Below are positions 2,964-34,560 of a stretch of DNA of 64,000 nt, piece after piece. Position 1 is the stretch's first letter. Each line of letters begins with the position of its first letter. Below the pieces are notes generated by a model. That model was not told the origin of the DNA. It saw only the letters and a list, made by a program, of their open reading frames with translations, and ran no database searches. The position numbers and the translations under genes are program-made. The stretch comes from Lepidodermella squamata (Eukaryota > Animalia > Gastrotricha), in the NCBI GenBank assembly GCA_047495785.1, contig JBLDXI010000010.1, forward strand, positions 434,001 through 498,000. The letters run 5' to 3'.

Positions 2964-4887
2964 TTATGCTTTCTTTACTTTGCTGCGGTGAATAGAAGAT
3001 AATTTGCGGATAAACCAAATGAAAGTAATCATAAATGCCACCGGTATCAAATAGAGGTCTAAATCATGAAGCCGGTAAAAGGGAGCTTCATCTTCAAACA
3101 TTCTTAAATGACTTGATCCGATCGTCATTTCCATTTCAATAATGTCAATTGCACTTTCGAACTTCTGAGCGCTGTAGTAAAGCGCTCCGCCAGCTTGCTG
3201 CAGATTCCGCATAAAAACCGGATCTTTTCCTCGAAACCGGGATATCAAATCATGTGATTTTAAGCAAATTTCCTCCTCAGTGATCGGGCGATCTGCAGTA
3301 GAATAGAGAACCTCGGCTAAACCAAGCTCCTTCGCTCTCATGCTTGTCAGAGGCTGGTCGGCGTTGATTGGATGCAGCAGAAGAGGTTTGCCGGCAAGAA
3401 TCGCCTCGAACAAGCTTTCCAGACCACCATGATTGACGAATAAATGTACCGCAGGGTGATTGAGCACCCTGATTTGAGCAACGCGCTTCTCCAACCTGAA
3501 ATTAGGATGATTCACCAGATTGCTCGGAACTGCGTAATCAAGCAACGCATCGCCGTAGGACCATAACAGGTTAACCTTGAATTCTTTGTTCCTACCGCAA
3601 AGCAGTAGACCATTTATCAAGCTTTGCATAGTTGCATTTGTTGGCATGAAAAGCGAACCGAATGCCATGTAAATGACGACTTCTTTCCTAGAATGCACAT
3701 CGTCTAACCACTTCAGAAGACCTTGGTCTACTTGATAGATATCCGGCTCGATTATTGGCCCGAGTACATGGACAAACGGTGAGATGTAACGTGCGTATTC
3801 AAAGCCGAAGTGGCTATGCACGAAAACGTGCTTATTCCGATACGGAACTGTTGGATCTATGTAATCCGGTATGCCTAATTTCGCGCGAACAGCTGATTTC
3901 TCCCCAAAGGTCGGGTACAACCAATAAAGCATGCGTAGCGGGAAAATGAACTTGGCGTAGAATCTCTGGTAATACGTTGCTTCAAAAGGGCTCGCGGCGG
4001 TAAAAGGGGTCGGAATGAATCTTTGAACCCCAGGTATAACCGGAAGAATTGAAAGTGATGCAGTCGCGACGTAAGGGATGCCGAGTTGATTGGCTACATC
4101 TGGACAGGTCGCAGACATCCAGTCGCAAACCATAAGATCAGGCCTGTCGCTTTCACATGATTCTTTCAAGCTCCTGAACGCACCTTCATAAATAAGTTGA
4201 ATCCCCACGATTTGGAATTTCATAGCTTCCTCGAACTCTAAAAGTTCAGATCGGTCAATTATTGGAGACGTGCCGTATAGAAAGGGCCCTTATTACTTAT
4301 AGCCCTTATAGCCTAATATGAATCTGACAAAGGGGAATTGTGAGTGCACATTTTTTACAGCGTAGTCTCACCCCAATTGTGTGACGCAACAAAAACCATA
4401 AGAGCCTTTTCTGCGCGGCACGTCTCATTTTTATCTGAAGGGGTATTTCCGGCTTACGTGTATGATCCTCAGGTAGCTTGTTGATTATCGCAGAGATTTC
4501 AGATTTGAAGAAATCGGTGAAATTCTGGCGGATTTCTTTATCCTTTCCCGGGGTCTTGTATTGATCGGTTAGTTTAAGGTGGAAAAATTTATCGAAATCC
4601 CCCGGTTCGAACCATGAAGCTGCTTCGTCGAAGAGAGCAGCAAATGTTGTTCGATGGCCTCGCTTCATCAGCGATTTTGACAGATAAATCATTGGCTTGA
4701 CATGCGATCGAGTGCAGAACTCCGCGACGAACATAACATGCTTTGCATCGGCGATGAGTTTCACTAAATCGGGGGCCATGTTGTGCCTGATTTGCTCAAA
4801 CTTTACCGAAGTATACGCGCCATTTCCTCCAGCGACGGAAACGATGAAAACCGTCAACATCAGTGCTATTTTAAAAGTATAGGTCAT
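2964..4887 (-). CDS. UDP-glycosyltransferase copy 3 (exons 4458-4887 and 2964-4237)
   Basis: Signal peptide, TRSH motif, phase-1 intron GTAAGC..TTTTAG 4238-4457, signature HGGLESLFEA..PINADQ, TM helix and KVKKA. Confidence 0.93.
4265..4426. mobile_element. MITE inserted in the UGT copy 3 intron
   Basis: About 29-bp imperfect terminal inverted repeats GAGACGTGCCGtatAGAAAgGGCcCTTAT / ATAAGAGCCTTTTCTGCGCGGCACGTCTC; absent from the homologous 50-nt intron of copy 4. No clear TSD. Confidence 0.75.
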
Positions 4888-17159: not shown

Positions 17160-20100
17160 CTATATCGCCGGCAAATCATCAGGGTCAAGTTCTGCCCTAT
17201 CACTGCCATCATCAGATTCACTGCTTTGGACTGGCGTCGTGTCATCACTGGAATCATCATCTTCTATCACATCGCCATCACTCGAATCGTCGTCCAAATT
17301 CGCGGGTTGATTAAAAGTATTCGCCGCTCGAACATGGGCCTCGACATTCGCGTCCAGCTTCGAAGGATTCCACGCAAAACTGCCCGTCTCGTACGACCGG
17401 ACCGTTTCGTTATCCGGGAAATAACTCGTATTCGTCATGTCCGGATTCCGCAGCTTCTCAATGGCTTGCTTCACAATTCCCATCGTATGCTTTTTCGACC
17501 ATAAACTCCGCGCTTTCATCGCAGCCAGGTACTCCTCGCTGTCGATGATTTCAAACCCGTCGTATTGAGACCATAGCAGCCGTTGAGTTGTTGAAAACGA
17601 ATCGCTGAAGCTGTCGAGCTTCTCTTTACTCGGCAATAATTCATTAATAGCTTCGACACATTCGCTGAATTTCGACGTCTGAAATGACGTCTTGATGGTT
17701 CGAAATCTATCAGTCGGGCCAACGCTGTTATTTGCGATGTGCAGGGAATCTTCAACAGCCATACCACATGACGAGCTAAATAAAATTGAAAAAATATGAA
17801 ATTTTTGTAAATTATCTTGTTCAATAATTCCCAAGGCCCTAGCTTAAAATTTCTTTTTTTTATGGAAAAATTGTCTCGGCTGAAAATTCTTCCCTATTCC
17901 AAGGGAAAAAAGAATGAAATTGACATTCTTTTGCGGACAAATGTGAGTGAATCGCATATGGCGTGGGCCAAATGGCCAACGAAAGTGGCCCTCGCCTTGC
18001 AGCTGTTCAGCGAGAGTGTTGCGAACACTTTGAAAACTTTGCGCCAAAAATCGATTCCTGACTTAATCGATTCCAAGGGTACATAGCTGCTCTGTAGGAT
18101 TTTCTACAGCATGTGGGACTGTCTGAATCAGCGCTCTTTCAACGACCCCAATCCCAGTCGTCATCCTGTGACACCAAAGAAATTTCCGGTTTGAAGTGGA
18201 AGCTGAGGGAGTCATTCCAGGTAATTCTCAGCTTCAGCGACCTTCATGACAATTCGGTCATAACGAGCTCTTCAAAATGCGGTGTGCGTGGTATGGTCAT
18301 AGCCTGAAGAATGGCTTCACGTGTTGCCTGAGTATCTCCTTTTCGAGGTGGGTTTTAAAAGTTTCCCGAAATACCACTTCCTTCAAGATTCCCTGGAATT
18401 GACGCTACGTCAATGGATTTGCAAGTAACCCCAGCCCTAATCAAGTGATTGCAGCCCTCCGAGGTTACGTCGTACAGCGTTTCATCGCCGCGAAGGGCGG
18501 TAATGCGAAGAATGATTTGTGCTTCAATAGTGCAGGAGCGACTATAGCAACTTGCTTCCTGAAAAAAATGTGCTGAGAGCGTCGGTACTGTCTCCGTTTC
18601 AACCCGGGTACCGGAGCCGGTGTTGTTGCAAACCGAGCCGGTGTACTCGCTAGCTATCCGAAGTGAAATTCTGTCTTGATTTTGGAAGCTGTTACTTATA
18701 CAGTTTTACAGGAGGGGCGGCCGGAGGCTTTGGCTCACTCGTTAAAATCACACTACTTCTTTTCCGTAGGATGGTTCCGGGAAGCAATCATCGAAATTAC
18801 ACGAAGCTTCGTTCAAAGATGCTGTTCGACATGTAGGGGTCGGAGAACGGCCGTCGACTGTCGCTGCCGCAACAGGCATTCCGAGGTCGACTCTTCAGCG
18901 TAGCAACACAAGTGATGTCAATCGTCGATGTGCTATATCGTCTGAGATAGAAAACGCGTTACTCGTGTATTTTTTGTGCTCGGTGACTTCGGCTTTCCTC
19001 TGGATCAGAAAGATATCCGCTTTATTGCGAAGGGCTACCTTGATAGCATGAAAATTGTAATTGCTTCCTTCAAAGACAACATGCCCGGGCTAGATTGGTA
19101 TTACGCATTTCTATCCCGTCATGAAAGTGTTATCAAGGTACGATTCGGTGAGAATGGGTGCTCGCGAAATTCTACAAAAATCTCGAATCGACGCTATCTG
19201 CTGCGGATAAGTATGTCCTTAATTTTGACAAAGCAAATATCACAGACGATCCCGGTAAGAAAACGTTTGTATATCGAAGAAACACGAAACGACCTGCCCG
19301 GCTTCTGAACGCATGAAAAGGCGCTTTGATGTGTTGATGTTTTGCGGAGCGACCGATGGCACTATGCTTCCAACCTATATCTGTTACCACAGCAATAAAC
19401 AATTTCGAACAAGGTGCCCAAGAAAACCGATTGATGGTGCTAGATGGTGCTAGATAGCTAGATAGACAGTAGAACGCCAAATTTCTTTACAAATACAAAT
19501 TTCTTAATACAAATTTCTTTGTATTAACCCTTTCATGGCCATGAGGACGATTTCAGAATTTAGACTTTGAAAATTCAGCTTTCTTCTGGCCATTGCTAGA
19601 CAGCTTGTCATGTACCAAAAGCCGGTGTTACCTTGAAAGAGAGGCCGCCCGTCGCTCAAAGAGCTCGAAGCTGTTGAGGGTGGCGTTGAAACAAAATCCC
19701 GTCGTAAAGCGAGTGTCGCTCAGCCAAGTTCTTTCATCCGTTTCCACAATGTTGGCCATTTGCCTAATCGGTTGGTGATCAGAATCGTAGAACGTGTTCC
19801 AATAAAGACTTATTCGAAGAGCTCGGTCGAATTTTACCTAAACCAGCTGGCAGGTATTTCCTCTTTTACTAAATATGACTGAACTACCATTTCCAATTGG
19901 TACAGGTTTGAGGATGCTAATTTGGCCAACAAAATTCTCGAGTGGAAGTTTCTACTGGGACTTATCATTCGGTATGAAATTTTGAATTTGACCAACGAAG
20001 TCAGCAAGTTTTTTGCCGATTTGCTAGTTGCTCTCAAGATGTTGACCAAGTTGAAGGCATCTTTGAAAAGATTCAAGGATAAGGGAATCAACCAAATCGT

Positions 20101-23100
20101 TGTAGATGCCAAAACTTTGGCAGTGGAAAAACTGTTCCTTGATGATTTGGCTATTTCCAAGCCGCATGAAGTTCGTCCGAGAAAGCGGCATCTTCGGTTG
20201 ATCGAAGAAGACGGAAGTCAACTTCCAGTAGTAATTATCTAGAGACACGCTCGAACAATTTAAAGAGGATTCCTTCGGCGCATTTCTTGATATGGCGGTC
20301 GAACAGCTGGAGGAACGATTCGAGCAAATAAAAGAATTTGAAGCGACTTGGGGATTTCTCTTCAATGTCCATAAGGCGGCTGGCTCTGTGGTATTGCAAT
20401 CGCACTGTCTGGACCTTCACAATGCTCCGAAAAGCCCGAGGATTCCCCGAGGAGCTGATCAAAGACTACAAGGTTACCGGCTACAAGTTACCAACTATGA
20501 CCTCTCGAAGGCGAAATGGCCGTCAACTGATCACTGCCAGTTGTGTTCATTGATTTTTTAACGAAAAAAGTGAGAAGATGTTGAATGAAGGAGGGAATAT
20601 GTTATGCATTTCTACGTGCTAGTGTGGCGCAGTACAAGCAATAATTGCAGCGAATGAAATCAGCTGGGCCGATAGGGCGATTTCGCCCCTTTTCTCGCAG
20701 CCTTAACGGTGACGGATAGAGACAAACGGGTTTCAAAATCGTGATCAAGGACCCCTAAAACCCCTAGAAATGTTGTCAAATATTTTTTCCACCGCAGATA
20801 AATAATTAGCTTCAACGCTTTAAGCTTTAGTTTGCTTTAAACGGCTTAATTTTGCCGCTCAATGCGAAAAAGACACCACTTACCATTTCAGAATTTCCGA
20901 CTCGTCAGGCTCATACGTCGCCCGACGTTCGAAAGGCCCAGTTCGGCAATAAACACAATAGACCCGTCGCGTTTCTGCCTCACCAGACGCTTCTTCATCA
21001 CTTTCACTATCAACATACTCGTCACATGACTCCGTAAACCGAATCAACGAGGCGCCAAACTTGAACTTCGGTCGTGGTATTTTTGGCGGGTTGATTATCT
21101 CAACGATATCATTCAAATCATCGTCTTCAACATTTATCTCCGAGGCAATTTTCGGCTTCTCCTCGACCTTGACAACCACAGGAGTCCAAGGTATGTCTTC
21201 ATTGACTTCGTCCACCCAACTCTGGCATAATTTGCCAAGAGCCGAAGCCGCGCCGAATGAAGTCATCATAGTGTCGAGGGGTGACGTAATTCGAGATTTG
21301 CTGCCCTGCCCCAGGTCGAAGTCGTCCGTCTCCTCGCGGCTTGAATACAGCTGGTAGAAAAGGTGACCCTGGCCGCTCAGTTGCAGGACAGTCATGAGGT
21401 CAGCTTTGCTAGACCGGCCGTACCGTTGGCTGAACAGAGCCAGACCGGCCATGGGTGCCTGCGTGAGGCATGTCTGCCGTAACAGCGGATTCAATTTCTC
21501 GGGCAGATGATTCTCGACAGATGCAAGGTTGGGTATCGACCATGGTTGACCTACAAAATTAAAAAAATCATCAATTTCGAGGACTTTCGTCTTTAATAAA
21601 AAATTAATCATCATTGCCTTGGCAAGTTCGAAGGCCAATAATTGCGATTTTTGAATAAGATAAGACAAGTGAAATCGCTGTTCGTACATAGTTTTCAGTG
21701 TTTTTTCTGGACAACATAGACTAGTGATTTTTTTCTGATAACTTCATGAAATTTTACAGGTAGATGCAGAGTAATGAGTCCTATTTGTGGGTCAAATATA
21801 TTTTTCTCAACTATCATCTGGCCGAAGGGAGGGCCCGAAAAGTATATTTCGGTTTTTCTTTTTTCCGACTGGTCAATCGGGAATTCAAGGATGATACTTT
21901 CAGGGAAGATAGATATGGCTGTCGCAATACAAAGTTTACCGCACTTTTACGAGGCTTTCACGGCAAAACTTCGTAAAAATTATTGCAGTCGTTCGGAAAC
22001 GATTTTATTCCAACCAGCTTTATCCTCTTATGGCGAGAATCGTGATGGAGGGGGCGCTCATGTGGATGACTCAGACGAAGACATTCAGCTTGTCGGTAAT
22101 CGCGATGAAGAAGCCGCCGAAGATGTCAACTTCGTCGAGCACCGGTAGCAGCGCTCCGGCATCTAATGTTGTTAACTTCAACGTAGGCAGGCGCGTTGTC
22201 CCGCCCGTGGCATTAAGTCCGTCCCCATCGCCGCAGCGGCGTTTTGTTAATACGCGCTGGGGTTCCGGGTCGCGAAGTGACCCATCGCACGCGCGTACTG
22301 CCCATGCTAATGCGCGTAGGTTTGTAGTTCCGCCGCCTTACGGGACGAATTTTGGGAGCTCTAATGTTGCGCCTTTTGTATTCAATTCACCGCCTTCATA
22401 TAGCGCGCCTTCATATAGGCACGTTTCTATCTTCCATTTTCCTCTTTGCATTTGCTGTGGCATTTGCTGGTCGTCCGAAGGATCAGCAAGATCGCGATGT
22501 AATTTTTCACCTCATTCGCTCCATGTCGCAAAGCGTGGAGTTGCATCAAATTCAGGCGGAAGCATTGCATTCGAATTTTGCTACTTTGGAATTGTTTGAG
22601 CAGTTTGTTGAGGAACGCATTAGTGCGAGTACGGTTATTAAGCTGTGGCAGGGTAAACGCATGAATCCGCAATTCGATGTAATCTTGTCTTCGGATTACA
22701 CCGTTCAATCGGCGTCGTCGTCTGCTGCGTCTGCTGCGTCTTCCGCGTCTGCTAGCTCAGCTATTGATCAGTCCACGATTAGGGCAGTGGTAGCAGAGAC
22801 TGTGAATGAAAGTTTGCTAAAGCTACTGGCGCAGGCACTCAGTCAAGCGATGGCTCAATTGAAGCCTGGGGCGTCGGGCAGTGCTTCGGATTTTCGTAAA
22901 GCTCAGTTGTCGGATCCGGATTTATCGCCTGTTCTGGCAGCGGACCATTCCTATCTCATAATACTGTTTTGTACAGGCATCTGATTGTTATTTCTATTAT
23001 TCTCACATCACCTGTTCCATTACCTTACCGGTTCCTCACGCAAGTTTTAAAGGAACACCGGTGTACAGTTTGACATTGATTCTTTTTACTTGTACAGAAC

Positions 23101-26100
23101 CTTGCGTGGCTTTGTATTGTCGCGACCGTTCCAATAAAAGAGATTGGTTAAGCGTCGTTTTTTTTGTTTTTGAACTTCCGTCACCGCTAGAGGCTCACCC
23201 TAATTTCTCAATTCCAACCAACTGGTCACTAACTCTTAACTCAATCACTGATTGACTTCTCCCGATTGTATCGATCCATCTTCCGTATTTTACTATTTTT
23301 GTTTGTTAAATGTCTCAACGCCCACCACAAGCCTCAGTGTTGCCTGTCTACGAATTAATTCAATTAAATCACCTCATCTAATGTATGCGTGCCTTGTGCG
23401 CATCACCAAATAATAAATATGCATATATGCTGTTCACGGTCGCCTCATTTCTGCGCTCGATCCTCTCATTGCCCATTTATAAATCCATTCCTAAATACTG
23501 TTATTCTTTTACAAAATGACAAATGGTGCAATCTGAAGGTAAACAATAAAATGAAAAATGCGGCTAGTTTAATTGCGAACACTCGAAATGCCGATGTCAC
23601 TCGTTGTGATGTAAGGCGCCTGGCTGATTTACGTCAGTTCATTGTTGATAACTTCTCTGACGAACCCCGCTCACTTATCACTTGGGCAACTGGCATAATT
23701 AATGCCCAAATAATAAAACGGTTACCACCGCCTTAAATATTTCTCCTTTTCTTAATTTTCGTATAAAAACTGGCTTCGTCTTGAATCTGTGGTTGAGTCG
23801 ATTGGGTCTATCGTGCGCTATCGAACCGAATGCCAGGCTACAGGGAAGAACTACGATCTCGAGACAATTAGCCATACGCTGGAACGGCAATTGCATGCAC
23901 CGCTCAACTAAAATTATATTGAAGTAAAATTCGGTACAAATGGGCGAGTAAATTACTATCCAGCTACTAGACGCGGTAAAATGAACCTATTGTTTCGCTT
24001 AAGCCCGCTCGGGTGCCAACCTGGCTGATAGTGAGACGTCCATTTCGACCCTGCTGAGTCAAGCAGGTGAAAATTCGATTTCTGTGAACGGATTTATTGA
24101 TTGTCAGAGAAATCTCGTCTCAGCTTACGCAGTCAAAGATACCGTTATTTTTTCAAATAAAATTAGTAGTAAAGCTTCATTTGCGCACGTTATCGACGCA
24201 GAAACTCTTCCTCGTCCTTATCTCGTTCTTTTTCAAACGATTTTTCAGACGTTTTCGAGCAATTTTGATGAAGTATCTGCTATATGTTCTCCTAAACCAG
24301 GTTTTTTTTTTAAGGAATGACTTGGTCGTTACTTTCACCGTTTTGGGCGTTACACAAAATCCAAATAACATTCGTGAATTCATATTACTCATTCATTATG
24401 AAACGGAGGGCTGATAGCCGTTCCAATAAGCTGAAGAAACCGAAACGAGAGCATAGGTTTCAGCAAAATTGGCTCAACGACAGGGAGTTGGCTTATGACA
24501 GCGAGCTTGATCGATGGTTTTTAACCTATGTTGAAGGCAGCGGCCCAACATCCGGCGTGTTATGCCCGATTTATAAAGAGAATCGCAAAGCTCAGTTAAT
24601 TGGAGGCATTCGGCAAGGTATTTGGATCACCACAGGATTTCGAAGTTTCCAACGCCAGAGAATTTTGGGACATCGTCGGACCAGTCAAATGCACTTGGAC
24701 GCTGTTGAGGCTGCCAAACTCGGTGGCGATTCTTCTTTGGCAAAGCTACACGAAGAGCGAAAGAATAAGAAAATCGAAACCATTGGCGATTTGCTTGACA
24801 TTATTTACTGGGTTGTTAAGCAAGAGATCGCTGTAAGAAAAGTCAAAGATTTGGTCGCTCTCGTTGTCAAGCTTCAAAAGGAAGGCGGACAAATTTTAGA
24901 AGACTTTGGCCATACTTCCTCAGTGAGTATTCGTGAATTCATTTTACTCATTGGTGAACATATTCAAGATAAAATTATTGAAGAATTGATCGATACCGAG
25001 AAACCATTCGGTCTCTTAACCGATGAAAGTAGCGATATTAACAAAATGTGCCAGCTGATGACATTTCTTCAATTTGTTGGAGAAGATGGAGAAAAGAGGA
25101 CACCTTTCTTGGATATCCGAACGATTAGTGAAACAACATCTGGGAACTTAGCTCGAGAAATTGTAGAACTTCTTGAAGAGTACAAACTTCAAATCCAAAA
25201 CATGCTCGCTTTGTGCAACGTTGGCACAAACAGCATGTATGAGTATGAAATCAAGTGCTTTTTCGTGATTGTTCAATTTTCTGCTTTTTTGGGCGTTACA
25301 CCGAGCCATTTTGGGCGTTACACTGTCACATGTGTAACATGCTTAAAAAAACGCTGTCTAAACATTCCCAGCTTTTCATCGGCAGCTGAAAAAATCCCAA
25401 CATGGCCGCTAAGAATTTTGCCCGGCAGACAATTCCCATTTCAATTTTCCATCAAATATCGAATTTTGAGAAAAATTCTTACCCCATGCAATCGGCAGAT
25501 CGGAACGTGTGTTTCTAAGCGAAACTGGGCACGCAATTGTTTCATCCGAAAACTGTGAGCCGCCAACAATCAACCAGTCCGGCCCATCTGTCTCGCTTTG
25601 CCTGATTTTATCGATGGCCAAATACGCGGCTGGAGCGCGCATCAAATGGCCCCAGGACTGGACGACTCGCCGCGGCATTCTTTGATCAATAACCAGAATA
25701 TGCCAATGACTTGAAACTGTGAAGCAGTTAGGACCAGGCCCTGCTTGGACACCGAACAATTCCAAACGCGACTGATGGTAATTGTGCTGCAATACATCGT
25801 ACATCGGCATTGTTGCGTAGGTCGCCATGTTTTCGCTCGATAGAGGTTCGAACAAAGTAACCGCAGGAGTTGAATTTGAGCATCTCAGATCGTTCAAAAA
25901 CATGGTATGAGCTTCAGTTGAGACAAATTGTCGCGGATGGCCGCCGAATTGGACACAGAATGGCGGTGAAAGTTGGCGAGATTTCGCATCGTAACAGCAG
26001 CCGAATTTACAATCGGGCATTTTCAATTTTGCGAGATGTTCGCGAGATTCGGCTGAATAGTGGTAGATTTCGCCATTCCGATTCGACGCCACGAATTCGC

Positions 26101-28923
26101 CTGGAACGTGCGGGTTCAGGTCGAAATGGGCGAAGGGTGAATCTTCGCGGGAAAATGTGTTCAGCCGGCGGATTGACCAGTCAACATATTCGATTGAGCT
26201 GAGATGGATCTCTCCATTTGAAGTTCGGGTCGCTATGATCGGATCTAAAAAATCAAATATATTAACATTTGGTAATTTTCTAACATTTTCATGCAGCTTA
26301 TTTTGCGTTACGACTCAAATTCCGAAGGGAATAAAAAACAGCGCAAATTTGAGCAACTCATCGTCTATTTCAGGTTAATTTTGACTTCAAAATACTGGCA
26401 CATAATACTGATGACAGTGATACCGAGTCTGGATTTGAGCATGACTATTGTGATGAAAATCCGGCTTCGAAAACGCCAGACCCACACCAGTAAAAAGAGC
26501 TCAACTACTACTACAGTACGGTTTCACAATTTTGATAATTTTCGGTAATCGATAAGTAAGGCCTCATCCACAGGCGTTGAGCAACTGTTCAGTCAATTGA
26601 AGACCGTTGTTTACCCAGGTGAAAATAACACTTCCGTTGAACTGGCAGAAAGCTTGATGGACCTTCGCCTTAACTGGCTCCAAACCTCCCCTTGACCACT
26701 GTAAAGACAAGCGCCACCACAGTTACGTCTCGCGCGTCGACACTGGCCACCCCGACAAAAATCAAGGACCTTATTGAACAGCAGGATCCGAAGGAACCGT
26801 AGACTGGAGATTTAGCATGGTTCGTAGATTGAGTCACCAGCCGAGACGGGTCTAACAACGATGGCTAATACAACATCGGCTTTAATGATAGGTTTCAACC
26901 TGAGGCCCGGAATTTGCTTCAAATGGCTGCAATTCTTCGCGAACATTGGGCGAAAAAGGGCAGGGCAGGTTGGCAATTTACGGCCACGGCGTGGTCAGCA
27001 GGCGATGCTAAGCCAAACGCGGCTCGACGGCGAACTATTCAACCAGGTTCAACAAACCTCGTACGTGCGCAACTACAGGGCGGAATTTTACAATAAATCG
27101 CCTCGGCTTTAGAGCGACCCTAGCTCCAACGAATCAAGCATCAAGTCCCCCACGAAGCAGTCTTGTCATTTCATTTAAACTGTTCATTTAAACTTTTCCT
27201 AGGCATCGCCTGAAAACTTCTACCAGCTGTTTACCATCAATTCTATGGTCCGCGATGTCTTTGTCAGTGGCGTCTACATGACGATGACACGTAAAACTGA
27301 AAAACTTCATTTGAATATCTTTGAACGTCTCGATAAGCTCATCCATTTCAAGAGTTAAGTTGCCACTTCTGATTTCGAAACCGATCATCTCCCCTTTCTC
27401 AGGCGTTACTTCACAAAGCTAATGTTAGTTAGGGCCATTCCAGCTAAGGCTAATGCTGATTCTGCGAAGAAAAGTGGGGTTTTTCGTGACGTCATCATAC
27501 TTCGATCACCTCTGTTATTGGAATGTATGACTGTTCATCTCTTTCTCATGAGGATATGGAGTCTATTGCTCGGGTGGAAACATCTCCCGATGGCACTATC
27601 TGTCAGCATTATTCGTATCTATTCAGAGATTATTTCAAGCAGGTGCAGCGAACTTGTCTGTGACGCTTTCAAGCTTCATCCTCGGCGATCGCAAAGCATG
27701 TACTTGCATGTACGAAAAGCCTCGGCAAAAATAATAATATTTGCATTCTTTTTCAACCTAAATTCGATCAAAACCCAACCAAATTTGCCGATGATTTGAA
27801 GTTACTTCTTATAATTCGGCTTCATGTCAAATAATGCACTGCCAAAGTTTAAAAAAATGTTCGATCAATTCACCCTTTGTGTAAAAATAAGCAGCCAACA
27901 TAATGTTACCTGATGATACGAATGAGCGAGCTGCGAGCTGTTTGATTGTCTTCTCGAATCGACGTGAAGTACAAAGCACGCGCGGTTTCATGACAAAATG
28001 ATGATCAAATGAGCAGCTAAATATTGCTACAAAAAAGCGACAATTATCAACGGCTGAAATTCAAAAGTTATGAAACTCACTGAACTGATCGAAATCAGTG
28101 CCAGACATTGTTAGAATGAGTTGAGACTTATCGCCCTCCGTAGATCTCGGATCGACAAAAACTTGCAAATTGCCACCGTAAGACATAGGATCAACAGGCT
28201 GTAAAGGAAGAAATTGAAAAAACCATCTTAAAATATTCTTACACGACTTACAGAGAAATATGGAAGTTTTTCGAACAATTCAAAACTTCGCTCAGAAAAT
28301 AGCTCGTCATATCTTACTTTGGCACTTCTGGCACTTTTCGCACTTTTGGCATTGTAAGATGCAGTCCATTCATCCAACCTCGCAACGCGTTGACTCACAG
28401 GAATAGTTTCGTCCTCAATAAAATCCAATGTACTCCTCATCGCCTCAGACATTTTCGTGGCTAACACCCGACCGCTAGAGAATAAATCTTTTCGCATACC
28501 GAGACTTAACCATAATTTGTCGAGTTGATCCCATTCTTCCGCAAAATCGTTGAAAATTCCTTTTTTATTGCTAGAAAAATAAGCAGCCCGCCGATTTCCA
28601 GTTAGAGAAAACGACGGAAAAACAACAGGCATCGTCGGCGTGATGGCGAACAGCGGCGCGGATGCGTTCAAATTGCGGGTAAATTGTATTTGAGGCGGCG
28701 TTTCCTCCGACAGCCAGGGCACCAATGTCAACGGGTCATCGGAAGCGGTTTCATCTAAACCGATTTGGCTGCTTCGAAAGCTCTGATTTTCGTCGTATTT
28801 CAAACTGTCATTTTGCCGGCTCAGCTGCAGACGACCGCCATCGCACGGCGGCACTGCGTCTCCGAACGAACCCCAAGAGTCGTAGATGGCATTTAGTTTA
28901 GGAAGTTCTCTCACGGCTTTCAT
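17160..28923 (-). CDS. TAF1C: TAF1C/RRN6-like RNA polymerase I core factor (SL1 complex) subunit; exons include 28252-28923, small unresolved exons at 27700-28198, 25483-26244, about 20884-21550 and 17160-17775
   Basis: Motifs resembling vertebrate TAF1C as recalled: FDLNPHVPGEFVAS (cf. LSPHLPGELA), QFGGHPRQ (cf. FTAHPR), ILVIDQRMPRRVVQSWGH (cf. LVDERLPLVPMLKWNH), APMAGLA, LQLSGQGHLFYQ. Junctions W|GQPW and K|CSSCG join in frame. Confidence 0.8.
17880..18330 (+). mobile_element. P-element/THAP9-like transposase fossil (in TAF1C intron)
   Basis: KVALALQLFSESVANTL resembles the P-transposase KVxLAxQLFSxSVAxAL motif, followed by LCRIF; interrupted by stops. Confidence 0.55.
18770..19420 (+). 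mobile_element. pogo/Tigger-like (CENP-B HTH plus DDE) transposase fossil
   Basis: LGDFGFPLDQKDIRFIAKGYLD..FKDNMPGLDWYYAFLSRH is typical of the CENP-B-type HTH; frameshifted downstream segment includes NFD and DGTMLP. Confidence 0.7.
19580..20430 (+). mobile_element. hAT (ZMYM1-like) transposase fossil
   Basis: Fragments ILEWKFLLGLIIRYEILNLTNEVSKFF and AVEQLEERFEQ..FEATWGFLF, with frameshifts. Confidence 0.65.
21980..23150 (+). mobile_element. Possible internally deleted LTR retroelement (gag-like ORFs plus pol linker)
   Basis: Overlapping low-complexity ORFs 22030-22599 and 22352-22984 ending in FRKAQLSDPDLSPV (similar to the AQxxDPxL motif before Gypsy integrase); AATAAA at about 23133. 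Paired LTRs not seen. Confidence 0.35.
24399..25240 (+). mobile_element. hAT-family (ZNF862/DUF4371-like) transposase, 3'-truncated
   Basis: HRFQQNW zinc-finger remnant, H..SQMH, IYWVVKQEIA, FGLLTDESSDI..QL..F (first catalytic Asp region). Similarity ends near 25240; the rest of the ORF runs through short ttttgggcgttacac repeats. Confidence 0.8.
26555..26690 (+). mobile_element. hAT C-terminal dimerisation-domain fragment
   Basis: Translates ASSTGVEQLFSQLKTVV..NNTSVELAESLMDLRLN, resembling the SxxER.FS.L..N..L..L..N pattern. Confidence 0.5.
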
Positions 28924-28994
28924 TTAAAATATATCTAAAAAAAGCCACGCGAAAAAATAGAATAAAATATAAAACTTATTATTGATACAAAAAT

Positions 28995-31900
28995 CTACAA
29001 GTTTTTATCCAAATGCTTATCTCTCATTGCGCTGTATTTTAGATACTGGCTTGGCTCACCAGTTGCATAGGCCTCAACCATACAAACAATTCTATGCACG
29101 TGAGTTGTCGACATTTTAACGCCTGGCAATGACGCCTGGCAAAGCGCAGAAATAGTTCGGTAGTAGACCGGTGATATATCCAGGTAGCTTGATATCGGGA
29201 TGTGGCTAGGAAACGGCGTTACAGACAGATCGCTCGATGACACAGTTTCTTTAATTTCATCGATAATTTCGCTGAGTTTTTTGCCGGTTCCATCGGCTTT
29301 GAATCTGCGATGAGTTTCGCCACTTAACGACACAGCTTTGGCAAATTTTTCGTAGTTTTCCACGCCGAAATGAGCCGTTGTAGAAGATTGGATTTCATTC
29401 AGTCGATCTGAGTAAAAATAATGAAATTAATTAATACATAGTTTGAAAAAACCGAGCGAGAACCTGAACTAAGTAACGATTTTTTTAAGGGATGATGTGC
29501 CAGTTGTTCATCATTATTTTTTTTTGGGAAATTTTACAACAAGGGTCGACAACTACTGAGAACTCTATGCAACAGAGTTTCCAAAATTACCCATTAAGTG
29601 TCCAAATTTATCGGAAAATGCTTTCGATCACAAAAATCAGATAAAAATTGAAAAAAATTCGTGAATCATAATTCTGATATCGGAAAAATCACTGATTTGT
29701 AAAATCAATGCTTTGTAAAATCAATGCTTGGAATCGATACCGCCTCTGCAGGCTGAAATATAACTCAGAAACTGACCGCTTATAGTGCAAAATAATCGTA
29801 ATATGAACATCTATCATTTAGGCATGATAACTAAAAAATTGAGGATCCAGAGAAAATTATGAAACTCGAAAAACATGTTCAAGTGTTATCAAGTGATGGA
29901 GTCTCAAATTTAGTGCTGAAACCCTGAAATCAGAGGAATTTATATTAATAAAAATACGCTAAATAAGAGCAGCAGCAGCTTTTTCGAAATAAATTATCCT
30001 GAAAATATTCAACAAAATTGAGAATTTTCCCAAAGACTTCCACCATGCATTTCAGCTTTTGGTAATAAAGTTAGAAACTACTAAAAAATGTCCCATAATC
30101 AAACAAAAACAAGGCCATCGCGAATTTTGTCTCGCGTCACCTGATTTAGGTTGTTAGGAACAATGAAAAATTGTTTTAAAAATTGATTGAGACAGATTAA
30201 GGCTAAATTTAGCGCCAGGATTCCATTCAAGACACGTCACAATCATTTCCTTACCGGTAATTGCGAAAAGTTCCGAATTGTCATGATGTTTCTTAGGTTT
30301 CTGCGACGGATGAAGCTGATCATTCAGAGTCGACTCAATGTCCCGTAGGTAATTATCCAACTCTTTTGCCGCCTTCAAGAAACTGACGTTCTTATCTACC
30401 ATAAACACATCAGTTATTCGATCTCCCAAAATTTCATTGTCCTTCTCAATAAATGACAGCAAGTTCTGCTGCGTTTTCAGCAAATCAACGTAACGTTCAA
30501 GCGACGAAAGCCATTCAGAAAATGAGAAGAACTTTGGTTCACGCTCGTCCGGGATCAAAGTTTCCAACTTTTTGTGGATAGCCGTTGTCTTTTTAAGGCA
30601 GCTCGAATCAAAAACTCCGAGTACGCTTTTCAAAGCCACCAGGATAAACGCGATCGCCCATGAATCCAAGTCAATGGCAAAAGGGAACATAGTCGATCTA
30701 ACGTCTGTTTTGCAAATCGGTACTTTTTTGATGAACGACATGACGTAATTGAAGAAGTCTCTAGGCAGATAGAGCCGTTCAATCGTTGAAATCACGACCA
30801 GCTGAAAAGGCGGTAGTGGAAGCTCGTCAATCTCCAAATAGTCAAGAAACAACGCTATTTGAAAAACGAGAACTTTCAGCGAGACGCAATCGTTTTTTAG
30901 CAAGTGCAAATCGTTACGCGAAAAGATTTTGAATTCACGCGGTAGGCATTTTCGCAGATCATAATGAGCTATTTTACCCGTAACAGCCCAACTTAAAACC
31001 AAGCCGGGTGTGACGTTATGACCGGAACTAACCAGGGCTAGGTATAGGACAACCAACGTTTTCAACGGAGAAATGATGAAAATACTTTTCAGCCTATTAG
31101 ATGTATTTCCATCTAGCAGATTTTTTGCCTCTTTGCGACGATCTTTAGGTATAATACAGGCTTTTCGATTCTGCATGCGATGTTTCTCCATTACTTTGAT
31201 CGTATCTCGCATGGTCGTCGCTAAACAACCCGCTAATAGCTCTCTTATATTCAAATCTTCCAGCTCGAGCTCTTCCTCCAAGTCTTTGGTCAATGTTAAA
31301 ACGTGAACCTTTGAGGGTATAGCGCCGCATTTGGTTACTTTCAATTTTCTAGCGTTCAATTCTGCGCCGGCATCAGCCTTGTCTTCTCCATCAGATGCAT
31401 CCAAATCGTCTACAACTTTAATCCGGTAGTCATGAAAGCCGTGAAGGGAAGATTTATGCGAAAGGAGAATCTGTCCCAACAGATAGGGGTTGTCCAACGT
31501 TGGTGGAACAATGTCTCGGTATCTTGGCTTTGTTTTAAAGTAAGCCGAATCTAATTTGAACAGCTCCTCGGTGAAAGCGAGACCCAATTTAGCAAGATAG
31601 GCTGACCAATAACGAAAGGCAAATTCCTATAGTTAATATATTCAAATTAATTTTGAAATTTTCAAGTCGGCTCGACCAACTTTCACTGATGGATCTGCTC
31701 CCAGTGAGATCGCGCTTTCGATTTGGCTTTTCAGCACAAACGATAAAGCTTCCGTTGAAGTATATGGTATTCCTCCATCACTGTACCTAGCAACCCGTTT
31801 GGACCGTTTGGTGGTTTGCTGGCCGTCTTTTTTCGCTTTATCGCCTTCGGCTCCTCCATCTTCCAAATCACCAGCCGAGGGCCCTTGAATCTCCTGGCCG

Positions 31901-32076
31901 ACGTAACTTTCCTTCAGAATAGTTTGGCTTTGCTAAATAATATCGAACAAAATTTTGAAAAAAAAAACAAGTGTCTCATTCTATTTTACTTTGAGCTGGC
32001 GATTGCAATCAACACAGTATGAAAAACCTTCGACTTCGTTGAATTCTTCGCAGCCACAAAAATCGCAAGTTGGCAT
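28995..32076 (-). CDS. TAF1B: TAF1B/RRN7-like RNA polymerase I TFIIB-related factor; exons 31990-32076, about 31681-31932, 30255 to about 31626, 28995-29407
   Basis: N-terminal zinc ribbon MPTCDFCGCEEFNEVEGFSYCVDC; TEALSFVLKSQIESAISLGADP followed by YWSAYL (cf. TAF1B EGFQYIL..Q..AL..LG..W.RYL); TLVVLYLAL..LSWAVTGKI cyclin-like repeat; junctions in frame. Confidence 0.85.
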
Positions 32077-32311
32077 TTGAAAAATCTAAAAAATTGAAAT
32101 TCGGCGTTTTATGAGATAAAGACGATTACTGTTTACTTTATGAGTTCGCCTCTAAATCTTTTACAAACAATACGAAATAACGCAAAACTAAGACAATTTG
32201 AGCAATGAGCGGAAAAAGGTATAACGAAGTATAAAAATTGAGTTGCATCGAGCACTAGAGAAATTTGTCACCGGTTTGATCAATTATTTCGAGAGACAAC
32301 AAAGTCGACGG

Positions 32312-34084
32312 CTAGCGCCGCCACGAACTTGCGCGCTGGTCTTTCCACGCCATCTTTTCCTGCTCACTCCACTCGTGTTCGAGAAGGTAATCACTAGCCA
32401 GCTTGAAAGTTTGATCCCGCATAATATCTCGGGATAACGGAGCATGGTTTTTCCAAATATCTTCGACGACGCCGGCTTCTTTCCTCGGCGGATCTTCCAC
32501 CCTGAATTTTTCGAAACGATACCCGCCGTTACATCGAACGCGTTCTTTCCGTTGCGAGCGAGGAGATAGTGAAAGGTCGATAGTTGCGACGGGAATTGAA
32601 ATTCGAGGGGCGGCGATGAGACAGAATCGCGTGAAATTTTTATTCAGCTCAAACTCAGGGGCGTTTGTTCCTTCATACACAGGTTTCGCTCGCCGTTGAT
32701 ACGGGTGATAGCGGTCTTCGTAGAATTCGCGACGACCCCTAGGAGATCTTGACCGATTACGCGTAGATGGTCTTTCAATCGGCGAGACTGAGCGCCTCCT
32801 ACTGGTGCGCCCGCCCATAGTTGATCGCGATCGGTCTCCGCTTGTTGATCTTCGCCTCGATCTATCAGTCGAAGATTCAATGGAAGCAATTCTAGCCCCA
32901 CCAAGCCCCGAGTCACGAGACCGAGAATCTTGACGCCTGATTGGAGATCTGGATAATGACCTTCGTCGCTTCGGACTGGGTTCCCGAGCTTTGACTGATA
33001 AGCTCGTTCTAGCTCTTTTCTCCGGACTTACATGAACCAAGTCCGTGTCCTCTTCGCCTGCTGGGACCTTTGGAAGGGGAATATCTCCTGAATCTGGCCG
33101 CGTTTCTTCATCGAGCGGTTCGCGAGTCGTCAAGGCCCAATCCAATAATTCATCTTCAAATTCCAACTTTTCTACGACAGACTGCAAATTCCGACCAGTC
33201 GGCAGAGGAGTAGGTGCTGATTCGTGAGAAATTATTATGGATAACGCTGAGTCAATGCCAGAGTCAATTGTTCTTGAAGGTAATTTACGATTTCGAAAAT
33301 GAGGAAATTGATCATCCAAGTCGATGAGATAAGGTATTGAATCGTTCGGGTCGTCGTAAAGCGACTCGACGTGGCTATTAAGTACGTCCGATATTTCATT
33401 AGCAAAATAATCGACATGCAACAATGCGCTAGGTGACCAGTCATCTTTATTTGTTAACAAGAAGCACAGCTCACGAATTGAACCGGTTGATAAGCGCTTC
33501 GGTAGTTTGATTGATTGACTAGCTATGGTATTCCCAAATCGGAGAAACGTCTTCAAAATACGACTATTAGAGGAAAACGAGGAGGGCGAGATGTTTTCGT
33601 AAAGCTCCAAGCATAAGCCACTCCACAAGGAGCGCCTGATATTTGAAAAACACTCTCTTTGTTTGATGTCAAGGGGCGGAAGGCGGTCATAAAAAGCAGC
33701 CAAGTCATTAAAAATAATAGTTAAGCAGCTTTTCCATGCTTTTTCAACGCTACGGAACCCATCATTGAACAAAGTCCGCGCTGAATTTGCAACCTGACAT
33801 CCCTTGGCAACAGCAATGTGTAGTTGAGCCGCTGGCGTATTAATTTCAGCGAGTAGTGCGTGGTGAAGTAATAGAGCACATTTCAAGCGACCGAATATAT
33901 GTTCGTGTAGCCACCTAAATGCAGAGATGTCCTCGGGATCCAGAGCTCCGTCAGGTGAAATCTCATCATCGGCAGGCGCTTCGCGGAACAACCTCGCGAC
34001 CTCCTCGTCATCAAGATCGTCTTTCTCAGGTTGTAATGAAGTAATGTCTGAGTCGGCAAGGCGACTAACAGGAGAATGAGCCAT
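32312..34084 (-). CDS. Orphan intronless protein (about 590 aa): acidic N-terminus, helical-looking domain, Arg/Ser-rich C-terminal half
   Basis: Long uninterrupted ORF with first ATG at 34084; RSRS/RSP repeats; pyrimidine-rich AG at 34169 upstream. No family recognised. Confidence 0.75.
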   Translation of the reverse strand: MAHSPVSRLADSDITSLQPEKDDLDDEEVARLFREAPADDEISPDGALDPEDISAFRWLHEHIFGRLKCALLLHHALLAEINTPAAQLHIAVAKGCQVANSARTLFNDGFRSVEKAWKSCLTIIFNDLAAFYDRLPPLDIKQRECFSNIRRSLWSGLCLELYENISPSSFSSNSRILKTFLRFGNTIASQSIKLPKRLSTGSIRELCFLLTNKDDWSPSALLHVDYFANEISDVLNSHVESLYDDPNDSIPYLIDLDDQFPHFRNRKLPSRTIDSGIDSALSIIISHESAPTPLPTGRNLQSVVEKLEFEDELLDWALTTREPLDEETRPDSGDIPLPKVPAGEEDTDLVHVSPEKRARTSLSVKAREPSPKRRRSLSRSPIRRQDSRSRDSGLGGARIASIESSTDRSRRRSTSGDRSRSTMGGRTSRRRSVSPIERPSTRNRSRSPRGRREFYEDRYHPYQRRAKPVYEGTNAPEFELNKNFTRFCLIAAPRISIPVATIDLSLSPRSQRKERVRCNGGYRFEKFRVEDPPRKEAGVVEDIWKNHAPLSRDIMRDQTFKLASDYLLEHEWSEQEKMAWKDQRASSWRR

Positions 34085-34379
34085 AAACTTGAGCAAGCAA
34101 TTCAGAGAAATATGAAAGAAAGTAGCATGTATCAGACGGCAAAAATACAGAAAAATATCAAATTTTATCTAATAAAGAAAAGCATAGATTAGCATTAGGA
34201 CTGAAATCGAAATTAAGAGTCGACAGTAGGGTTAAAATAAGCCCAATAGATGCTTCAAAGGGAACAGTTGACAATACCCTGTCAAGAAACCGAGATTGCA
34301 ACTGCGCGCCTTCAGGTATGTGTAGGGGTCTTCACGGCGTCGGTTCTGCGCTGCACGATTGTCGCGGTCGACGCGCTGC

Positions 34380-34560
34380 ACGTTTTTGGACCGGCAGAAT
34401 TGCGCGCCAATTACTATTTGTCAAGGTCAACAAATGCAAACTTTGGATATATGTTCAACAAATTAAAAATAACAACAAATAATTTGATATGTTTTTAAAA
34501 GACTAATTGGCGGGGAAGTTAGTTTTTGGCTTCGCGCATGATTGGCAGCCAAATAGCGTC
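34380..34560. promoter_or_regulatory. Candidate divergent promoter between the Pol I factor cluster and the HRC-like gene
   Basis: E2F-like GCGCGCCAA (about 34403) and TTGGCGGGGA (about 34507) plus ATTGG/CCAAT boxes in a head-to-head interval. Short motifs only. Confidence 0.3.

What the first reader, a model, noticed from the sequence alone, without database searches (positions are those of the whole stretch)
17160..34169. Candidate RNA polymerase I initiation-factor operon: orphan, TAF1B-like, TAF1C-like
Seen: the TAF1B-like stop (28995) is only about 70 bp from the TAF1C-like ATG (28923) on the same strand. The spacer holds an AATAAT/AATAAG-like signal, a U-rich tract and an acceptor TTTTTTTAG (28935) with no donor. 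TAF1B has a similar acceptor 10 nt before its ATG (32086). Known: TAF1B/Rrn7 and TAF1C/Rrn6 are partner subunits of SL1/Core Factor, diverge quickly, and are hard to detect in many invertebrates. Inference: two subunits of one complex are co-transcribed and separated by trans-splicing. I do not know this arrangement from other animals.
Basis: partly seen in the sequence, partly recalled or inferred. Interest (0 to 1): 0.85.

Follow-up and report, generated by a model that had tools for sequence, protein, structure and literature searches.

The report
Neighbouring TAF1B-like and TAF1C-like genes
Two very divergent genes for partner subunits of the factor that starts ribosomal RNA synthesis sit 71 bases apart on one strand of a small invertebrate genome, laid out like a trans-spliced operon, but joint transcription was not shown.

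Summary
Three minus-strand genes lie in a row:
- an orphan (34084-32312);
- a 707-aa TAF1B/Rrn7-like gene (32076-28995);
- a 983-aa TAF1C/Rrn6-like gene (28923-17160).

The TAF1B stop and the TAF1C ATG are 71 nt apart. That spacer holds AATAAT/AATAAG, a U-rich tract and an unpaired TTTTTTTAG ending 11 nt before the ATG. TAF1B has TTTTTTAG ending 9 nt before its ATG.

Both family assignments rest on sub-threshold evidence that agrees:
- TAF1B: Pfam hits in the right order (Rrn7 zinc ribbon, then both Rrn7 cyclin domains).
- TAF1C: Pfam hits to the TAF1C helical bundle and beta-propeller.
- Both: every top cluster in the protein-language-model search belongs to the expected family.

One metagenome relative matches the TAF1C-like protein from end to end. 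This shows that the window's six exons, spread over 11.8 kb with transposon relics in two introns, are one gene.

RNA contigs confirm four introns and show separate mature mRNAs. The TAF1B contig ends at 28963 and TAF1C coverage starts at 28929.

No spliced leader or polycistronic RNA was seen at either acceptor. The one relative has no TAF1B upstream of its TAF1C.

Verdict: gene identities likely (about 0.85), operon plausible (about 0.6), both unproven. This scan has already reported leader-spliced operon-like clusters elsewhere in this genome, but not this pair.

The parts
32312..34084 (-). Orphan gene: single-exon ORF of 590 aa with an N-terminal domain, a central Arg/Ser-rich stretch and a C-terminal domain. 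A candidate acceptor TTTATTAG ends at 34169, 84 nt before the ATG.
   Evidence: ORF and translation. No Pfam family, no homologue and no PDB match. RNA contigs cover its 3' part and reach at least 32130. All 7 differences between runs are synonymous.
32077..32311 (-). 235-nt spacer between the orphan and TAF1B-like. The orphan's 3'UTR reaches at least 32130. The unpaired acceptor TTTTTTAG is at 32093-32086.
   Evidence: Sequence. X1 contig 32314-32130 then runs into a SMART adapter, so 32130 is a minimum extent and not a mapped poly(A) site.
31990..32076 (-). TAF1B-like exon 1: zinc ribbon of form CxxC-x14-CxxC.
   Evidence: Pfam Zn_ribbon_RRN7, E=0.0029, best hit but below cutoff. The exon 1-2 junction is not covered by RNA contigs.
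31681..31932 (-). TAF1B-like exon 2: linker with an acidic and basic stretch.
   Evidence: Gene model. The exon 2-3 junction (54-nt intron) is confirmed by RNA contig X1.
30255..31626 (-). TAF1B-like exon 3: both cyclin-fold domains.
   Evidence: Pfam Rrn7_cyclin_N E=0.0073 and Rrn7_cyclin_C E=0.036, in the right order. Top ESM Atlas clusters are all Rrn7/TAF1B (0.95, 223/256 features).
28995..29407 (-). TAF1B-like exon 4, including stop TAG 28997-28995.
   Evidence: The 847-nt intron 30254-29408 is confirmed by an X1 contig that ends at 28963.
28924..28994 (-). 71-nt spacer holding AATAAT/AATAAG (28983-28975), the end of the TAF1B RNA contig at 28963, a U-rich tract and the unpaired acceptor TTTTTTTAG (28943-28935).
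28252..28923 (-). TAF1C-like exon 1.
   Evidence: RNA contigs; the 53-nt intron 28251-28199 is confirmed. Aligns to L001 1419 onward, with shared motifs DSWGSFGD and PWLSEE.
28081..28198 (-). TAF1C-like exon 2.
   Evidence: Both junctions are confirmed by X1. The intron position matches the relative's.
27910..28026 (-). TAF1C-like exon 3.
   Evidence: The X1 contig shows its 5' junction and a further 69 nt that map outside the stretch laid. Donor is CAG|GTAACA.
25483..26244 (-). TAF1C-like exon 4: beta-propeller blades, with motifs GPGPNC and IDQRMPxRxVQSWGHL.
   Evidence: tblastn of P0001 gives 2e-34. Strong acceptor TTTTTTAG at 26245. The relative's equivalent part hits TAF1C_beta-prop at E=0.038.
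20884..21550 (-). TAF1C-like exon 5: helical bundle, ending in the first CxxC.
   Evidence: Pfam TAF1C_HB, E=1.1e-4, 22.7 bits against a cutoff of 24.8. tblastn of P0001 gives 2e-21. The acceptor was refined by homology.
17160..17775 (-). TAF1C-like exon 6: second CxxC, a conserved C-terminal helix region, an acidic tail and the stop at 17162-17160.
   Evidence: tblastn of P0001 gives 7e-11. Both proteins end in DLPxx.
24317..25555 (+). Opposite-strand ORF inside TAF1C-like intron 4, probably a relic of a transposase-related gene.
   Evidence: Pfam DUF4371, E=2e-5, below cutoff.
17811..18083 (+). Opposite-strand ORF inside TAF1C-like intron 5: relic of a P-element/THAP9-type transposase.
   Evidence: Pfam TNP-like_GBD, E=2.4e-8, above cutoff.

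Best explanation
Three protein-coding genes lie head to tail on the minus strand: an orphan, then a very divergent orthologue of TAF1B/Rrn7, then a very divergent orthologue of TAF1C/Rrn6. TAF1B/Rrn7 is the TFIIB-like subunit of SL1/Core Factor, and TAF1C/Rrn6 is its beta-propeller plus helical-bundle subunit.

The most likely mechanism has four steps:
1. One promoter upstream of the orphan (around 34.2-34.9 kb) drives a polycistronic precursor.
2. Each upstream message is cleaved and polyadenylated a few tens of bases before the next gene.
3. The next gene's 5' end is made by trans-splicing a spliced leader onto the unpaired acceptor: 32086/32085 for TAF1B and 28935/28934 for TAF1C.
4. The two SL1 subunits are therefore expressed together.

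Shown here: the genes, their exon structure, the separate mature mRNAs and the signal layout. Inferred: family membership (strong but sub-threshold), trans-splicing at these two sites, and co-transcription.
For: Gene models
- The TAF1B-like gene has 4 exons and 707 aa.
- RNA contigs confirm four introns: 31680-31627, 30254-29408, 28251-28199 and 28080-28027.

TAF1B identity
- Pfam best hits come in the right order: Zn_ribbon_RRN7 (0.0029), Rrn7_cyclin_N (0.0073), Rrn7_cyclin_C (0.036).
- All ten best ESM Atlas clusters are Rrn7/TAF1B (score 0.95).

TAF1C identity
- TAF1C_HB scores 1.1e-4 in the window.
- The relative P0001 hits the same part of TAF1C_HB (0.061) and also TAF1C_beta-prop (0.038), in the right order.
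- The Atlas clusters nearest P0001 that carry a Pfam family are Rrn6/TAF1C (score 0.94, 205 features).

One gene from 28923 to 17160
- The window protein and the relative's compact gene agree from first to last residue, 34% identical over 898 aligned residues.

Operon anatomy
- The coding sequences are 71 nt apart.
- The TAF1B RNA contig ends at 28963, 12 nt after AATAAG and 28 nt before the acceptor.
- TAF1C coverage begins at 28929. No contig bridges the gap.
- Strong acceptors with no donor sit 9 and 11 nt before the two ATGs. A 25-nt stretch holds one by chance 0.4% of the time.
- Earlier notes of this scan report a 30-nt leader and leader-capped genes in similar clusters of this genome. 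I did not verify these.
Against: - No leader sequence was listed at 28934 or 32085. 45 loose ends were not displayed and only one reads call was allowed.
- No polycistronic RNA was seen.
- No Pfam hit reaches its curated cutoff.
- Structure prediction failed (pLDDT 35), so neither fold was checked.
- Sequence searches of the PDB were blank.
- The exon 1-2 junction of TAF1B is not covered. The one RNA contig that crosses the exon-1 donor runs into 29 nt that are not in the window.
- The relative has no TAF1B-like sequence in the 1.4 kb upstream of its TAF1C-like gene.
- Most genes in this window are on the minus strand, so shared strand means little by itself.
Confidence: 0.55

Rival explanations
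1. The genes are what they seem, and are trans-spliced or closely packed, but their adjacency is a chance by-product of a genome where many genes lie in tight same-strand clusters. On this reading it is not a selected pairing of the two SL1 subunits.
For: - The one relative has TAF1C-like without TAF1B-like upstream and shares no other flanking gene with the window.
- Earlier notes list many operon-like clusters of unrelated housekeeping genes in this genome.
- The first gene of the run is an unrelated orphan.
- Inference: with thousands of interacting protein pairs in a proteome, a few adjacent pairs are expected by chance.
Against: - For one named pair, immediate same-strand adjacency is unlikely beforehand, at about one over the gene number.
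- The relative is distant (34% identity) and its contig is short.
Confidence: 0.4
2. TAF1C-like has its own promoter inside or just after the TAF1B 3' end. The TTTTTTTAG would then be unused, or would be the acceptor of a cis-spliced 5'UTR exon. There is no operon.
For: - No leader and no precursor were seen.
- TAF1C coverage stops at 28929, which does not mark the acceptor exactly.
- The TAF1C-like gene, at 11.8 kb with transposon relics in its introns, does not look like a typical compact operon member.
Against: - Only 33 nt separate the end of the TAF1B contig from the first TAF1C coverage.
- No cis joint onto 28934 was listed.
- The same strong-acceptor-then-ATG layout recurs at other gene starts in the window.
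- Leader trans-splicing is reported for this genome.
Confidence: 0.25
3. One or both family assignments are wrong. The proteins would then be lineage-specific proteins that only resemble Rrn7/TAF1B or Rrn6/TAF1C in composition or general fold class.
For: - Every Pfam hit is below its gathering score.
- Atlas recognition values are low (1831 and 1921), and the tool warns that high scores are then weak evidence.
- No homologue was found apart from one metagenome protein.
- Exon 1 of TAF1C-like alone gave noise hits.
Against: - TAF1B has three independent best hits to the three domains of one family, in the right order.
- TAF1C has the same profile region hit in two sequences that are only 34% identical, plus a beta-propeller hit in the right order.
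- The embedding search agrees independently for both proteins.
Confidence: 0.12

Closest known systems
Rrn7/TAF1B, the TFIIB-like subunit of yeast Core Factor and human SL1 (Pfam PF11781, PF20644, PF20645)
   Same: An N-terminal C4 zinc ribbon is followed by two cyclin-fold domains and a C-terminal extension, and the three domain hits come in the same order. SL1 contains TAF1A (Rrn11), TAF1B (Rrn7), TAF1C (Rrn6) and TAF1D (PMC12235521).
   Different: It is extremely divergent. All hits are below the curated cutoffs, and a word-based search of 5.8 billion proteins found no homologue. Half of the differences between runs change an amino acid (4 of 8).
TAF1C/Rrn6, the beta-propeller plus helical-bundle subunit of SL1/Core Factor (PF20641, PF20642; PF10214, PF20640)
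   Same: The hits are beta-propeller first and helical bundle second. The nearest embedding clusters are Rrn6 and TAF1C from fungi, arthropods, plants and chordates.
   Different: The hits are sub-threshold. A CxxC-x19-CxxC motif and an acidic tail follow the bundle and are conserved in the relative; I did not check whether other TAF1C proteins have them. In this genome the gene is stretched to 11.8 kb by three long introns.
Spliced-leader-resolved operons of nematodes, tunicates and other animals
   Same: The genes are on one strand. A poly(A) signal lies a few tens of bases before an unpaired strong acceptor, the 5'UTRs after the acceptor are very short, and the mature mRNAs are separate.
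   Different: Neither the leader nor the polycistronic RNA was shown at this locus. The distance from the end of the upstream RNA contig to the acceptor (about 28 nt) is shorter than the roughly 100 nt typical of C. elegans SL2 operons (general knowledge). The host is probably a gastrotrich according to earlier notes, and I found no paper on trans-splicing in that phylum.

Membership tests
Rrn7/TAF1B | N-terminal C4 zinc ribbon of the Rrn7 type | tested here: met
   Exon 1 encodes CDFC-x14-CVDC. The best Pfam hit is Zn_ribbon_RRN7 at E=0.0029 (17.7 bits, cutoff 27.1), so the pattern is present but the score is sub-threshold.
Rrn7/TAF1B | Two cyclin-fold domains after the ribbon (Rrn7_cyclin_N, Rrn7_cyclin_C) | tested here: inconclusive
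   The two best Pfam hits are in the right order, at E=0.0073 and 0.036, both below cutoff. Atlas top clusters are all Rrn7/TAF1B. The AF2 model was unusable at pLDDT 35.
Rrn7/TAF1B | Assembly with TAF1C/Rrn6 and binding to Pol I/Rrn3 | not testable with these tools
   Needs co-purification or confident co-folding.
TAF1C/Rrn6 | N-terminal beta-propeller | tested here: inconclusive
   The relative P0001 residues 5-91 hit TAF1C_beta-prop at E=0.038. The window's equivalent exon gave no hit. The AF2 model of P0001 shows strand-rich N-terminal segments, but at pLDDT 36.
TAF1C/Rrn6 | Helical bundle after the propeller | tested here: inconclusive
   TAF1C_HB scores E=1.1e-4 (22.7 bits, cutoff 24.8) in the window and 0.061 at the same profile positions in P0001. 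Atlas clusters are Rrn6/TAF1C.
Spliced-leader operon | Same-strand genes separated by a short spacer | tested here: met
   The coding sequences are 235 and 71 nt apart.
Spliced-leader operon | The upstream mRNA ends just before the downstream acceptor, and the mature mRNAs are separate | tested here: met
   The X1 contig ends at 28963, the acceptor is at 28935, and the next coverage starts at 28929. These are contig ends, not mapped poly(A) sites.
Spliced-leader operon | The downstream mRNA carries the spliced leader at the acceptor | tested here: inconclusive
   No loose end was listed at 28934 or 32085, but 45 loose ends were not shown and the contigs barely reach the 5' ends.
Spliced-leader operon | Polycistronic precursor spanning the spacer | not tested
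   Only assembled contigs were available. This needs raw reads, nuclear RNA or long reads.
Spliced-leader operon | The organism carries out leader trans-splicing | not tested
   Known only from earlier notes of this scan. Rfam found no SL RNA in this window.

The most novel reading that the evidence does not exclude
The three-gene run is a dedicated RNA polymerase I initiation-factor operon. On this reading the orphan at its head is the lineage's missing third SL1/Core Factor subunit, a functional counterpart of TAF1A/Rrn11 or TAF1D. Operon membership would then point to a subunit that sequence searches cannot find.
Probability: 0.07. Interest if true: 0.7.

Novelty: new member of a known kind. 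Interest (0 to 1): 0.42.

Why it matters
If co-transcription is confirmed, this would be an animal operon that couples two partner subunits of the Pol I promoter-recognition factor. That would be a clear case of subunit amounts being matched by shared transcription.

Whatever the outcome on the operon, the work gives the first usable gene models for the very fast-evolving TAF1B and TAF1C orthologues of this lineage. It also identifies one relative that anchors them.

The mechanism (leader-resolved operons) is already known, and this scan has already found it elsewhere in this genome. The gain is therefore one instructive locus, not a new principle.

Tried and rejected
- Homologue search with TAF1B exon 3 and with the orphan: nothing.
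- Profile search with the TAF1C alignment: only the known relative.
- Two metagenome scans with conserved TAF1C motifs: no further relatives.
- AlphaFold2 of the relative's TAF1C-like protein with a 4-row alignment, and of TAF1B exon 3 alone: pLDDT 36 and 35, unusable, so I ran no fold search.
- PDB sequence searches: only noise.
- Atlas search with TAF1C exon 1 alone: bacterial Peptidase_C69 fragments at low recognition, which I took as noise.
- My first automatic gene model put exons at 27408-27235 and 20131-19838 and used longer forms of two others. RNA coverage and the relative's protein showed these were wrong, and I dropped or trimmed them.
- An in-frame TAF1B-TAF1C fusion through the weak donor at 28998: out of frame, so rejected.
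- Rfam on the whole window: no family found.
- Repeat search over 17-29 kb: nothing.
- Looking up the RNA contigs by exact protein would have needed a typed multi-exon sequence, so I left it out.
- The chance argument about adjacent interacting pairs is my own rough reasoning, not a computed result.


Full report
**Observation**

On the minus strand the window holds a 590-aa single-exon ORF, the "orphan", with its ATG at 34084 and stop at 32314-32312. A multi-exon gene starts at ATG 32076 and ends at TAG 28997-28995. A third gene starts at ATG 28923.

The spacer between the second stop and the third ATG is 71 nt. It holds AATAAT/AATAAG (28983-28975), a U-rich tract and TTTTTTTAG (28943-28935), and no donor lies between the stop and this acceptor. 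TTTTTTAG (32093-32086) ends 9 nt before the second gene's ATG.

These acceptors are unlikely to be chance. TTTTTAG occurs 15 times on the minus strand and 4 times on the plus strand. Only 0.4% of 25-nt stretches hold one. Five of the 15 lie 4-13 nt before an ATG.

**TAF1B-like gene**

The model has four exons: 32076-31990, 31932-31681, 31626-30255 and 29407-28995. It encodes 707 aa, and a simple splice-aware dynamic program recovers it.

One public run, X1, behaves as RNA: it carries spliced contigs and a SMART adapter. The other run, X2, is continuous DNA. X1 confirms the 54-nt intron 31680-31627 and the 847-nt intron 30254-29408.

X1 does not cover 31856-31989 or 32051-32129. The exon 1-2 junction and the 5' end are therefore not observed.

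Family evidence:
- Exon 1 encodes CxxC-x14-CxxC, and its best Pfam hit is Zn_ribbon_RRN7 (E=0.0029).
- Exon 3's two best hits are Rrn7_cyclin_N (0.0073) and Rrn7_cyclin_C (0.036), in that order.
- All three hits are below the curated cutoffs, but they are the three domains of one family in the correct order.
- The ESM Atlas feature search of exon 3 returns only Rrn7/TAF1B clusters among its ten best (0.95, 223 of 256 features).

A word-based search of 5.8 billion proteins and a PDB sequence search found nothing. I put the TAF1B/Rrn7 assignment at about 0.9.

**TAF1C-like gene**

A Pfam TAF1C_HB hit (E=1.1e-4, 22.7 bits, cutoff 24.8) lies in an ORF at 21743-20883, which is 7 kb downstream of the ATG at 28923. 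An exhaustive phmmer search of 1.84 billion representatives with that ORF gave one true relative, P0001. It has 625 aa and scored E=1e-15. It is encoded on a 7.2-kb metagenome scaffold, L001.

The relative ties the window's pieces into one gene:
- P0001 aligns in order to three window ORFs: 26125-25481 (2e-34), 21551-20943 (2e-21) and 17654-17331 (7e-11).
- The window's first three exons, whose junctions are confirmed by RNA, align to L001 directly upstream of P0001 (1e-18).
- After I refined two acceptors by homology, the window model has six exons: 28923-28252, 28198-28081, 28026-27910, 26244-25483, 21550-20884 and 17775-17160.
- This 983-aa protein is 34% identical over 898 aligned residues to the relative's compact four-exon gene (943 aa).
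- The agreement runs from the shared "MK" start to the shared "DLPxx" end. The first intron position is shared.

Introns 3, 4 and 5 are 1665, 3932 and 3108 nt long. Introns 4 and 5 hold opposite-strand transposase relics: DUF4371 (E=2e-5) and TNP-like_GBD (2.4e-8).

Family evidence:
- P0001 independently hits TAF1C_HB at the same profile positions (0.061).
- P0001 also hits TAF1C_beta-prop (0.038), N-terminal to the bundle hit.
- The Atlas clusters nearest P0001 that carry a Pfam family are Rrn6 and TAF1C from fungi, arthropods, plants and chordates (0.94, 205 features).

I put the TAF1C/Rrn6 assignment at about 0.85.

Attempts to strengthen it failed. AlphaFold2 models of both proteins were unusable (pLDDT 35-36). 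PDB profile searches were blank. No further relatives were found.

**Orphan**

The orphan has no Pfam family, no homologue and no PDB match. It is nevertheless a real gene: RNA contigs cover it, and all seven differences between runs in its last 100 codons are synonymous. Its middle part is rich in Arg and Ser.

**Operon question**

What is shown:
- The X1 contig for TAF1B ends at 28963, which is 12 nt after AATAAG and 28 nt before the acceptor.
- The first TAF1C coverage is at 28929.
- The depth figures leave no room for another contig across 28930-28962.
- The mature mRNAs are therefore separate, and the two units do not splice into one message. The only conceivable fusion donor is out of frame.
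- The orphan's transcript reaches at least 32130, which is 44 nt before the TAF1B acceptor.

What is not shown:
- No leader was listed at either acceptor.
- No precursor RNA was seen.

Earlier notes of this scan say the genome, probably that of the gastrotrich Lepidodermella squamata, encodes a leader RNA whose first 30 bases are found on mRNAs. They also say several similarly packed clusters have a leader at the predicted acceptor. I could not test this.

On anatomy and this context together, I rate co-transcription of TAF1B-like and TAF1C-like at about 0.6.

**Is the pairing meaningful?**

TAF1B (Rrn7) and TAF1C (Rrn6) are subunits of the same complex (PMC12235521). Three points weaken a selected link:
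- The one relative has no TAF1B-like sequence in the 1.4 kb upstream of its TAF1C-like gene. That stretch holds a 77-aa ORF and the start of a divergently oriented gene.
- The relative shares no other flanking gene with the window.
- Operon-like clusters of unrelated genes are common in this genome, and most genes of this window are on the minus strand.

A chance juxtaposition therefore remains a serious rival.

**Literature**

I found no paper on TAF1B and TAF1C in one operon, and none on leader trans-splicing in gastrotrichs, in the library searched.

**Unexplained**

The only X1 contig that crosses the exon-1 donor of TAF1B is a strand-flipped chimera. Exactly at the donor it continues into 29 nt that are not exon 2, not intron 1 and not anywhere in the window at up to 3 mismatches. 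A paralogue, an alternative partner exon and a library artefact are all possible.

**Verdict**

The operon reading fits the anatomy but is unproven. The kind of system is already known, and this scan has already noted it elsewhere in this genome, so the interest is moderate.

Noticed in passing
window 29558-29754 (inside TAF1B-like intron 3): A very high-copy interspersed repeat. DNA-run word depth is about 20,700 against about 87 in the flanks. Many contigs break here with variable joints and loose ends, and some RNA contigs also hit it.
   Followed up: no
window 31990 (exon-1 donor of TAF1B-like): An RNA contig joins exon 1, exactly at its donor, to 29 nt absent from the window. The same contig flips strand at 31855/32050. 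Similar strand-flip joints occur at 28835/28929, 27002/27109 and 26840/26937.
   Followed up: partly
window 17811-20560 and 21750-25555, plus strand: Opposite-strand ORFs sit inside the two longest TAF1C-like introns. One has a P-element/THAP9-type TNP-like_GBD domain (E=2.4e-8) and one a DUF4371 match (2e-5). They could be transposon relics or nested domesticated genes.
   Followed up: partly
window 20955-20944 and 17777-17766; L001 about 3640-3720: A CxxC-x19-CxxC motif follows the helical bundle of the TAF1C-like protein and is conserved in the relative. In the window it is split by the 3.1-kb intron.
   Followed up: no
window 26800-27190 (inside TAF1C-like intron 3): Low-depth RNA contigs with inverted joints lie here, although no exon of the final model does. 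This is an unidentified transcript or a repeat.
   Followed up: no
window 51663, 42962, 40604: Other minus-strand TTTTTAG acceptors lie 4-13 nt before an ATG. This is the same layout as at TAF1B and TAF1C and suggests further trans-spliced gene starts.
   Followed up: no
window 32312-32620 (orphan C-terminus): Seven of seven differences between sequencing runs are synonymous, whereas TAF1B-like shows 4 synonymous and 4 replacement differences.
   Followed up: partly
window 34300-34420: A GC-rich stretch with a repeated CGTGCAGCGC motif lies about 150-250 nt upstream of the orphan's candidate acceptor. It may be part of the cluster's promoter.
   Followed up: no
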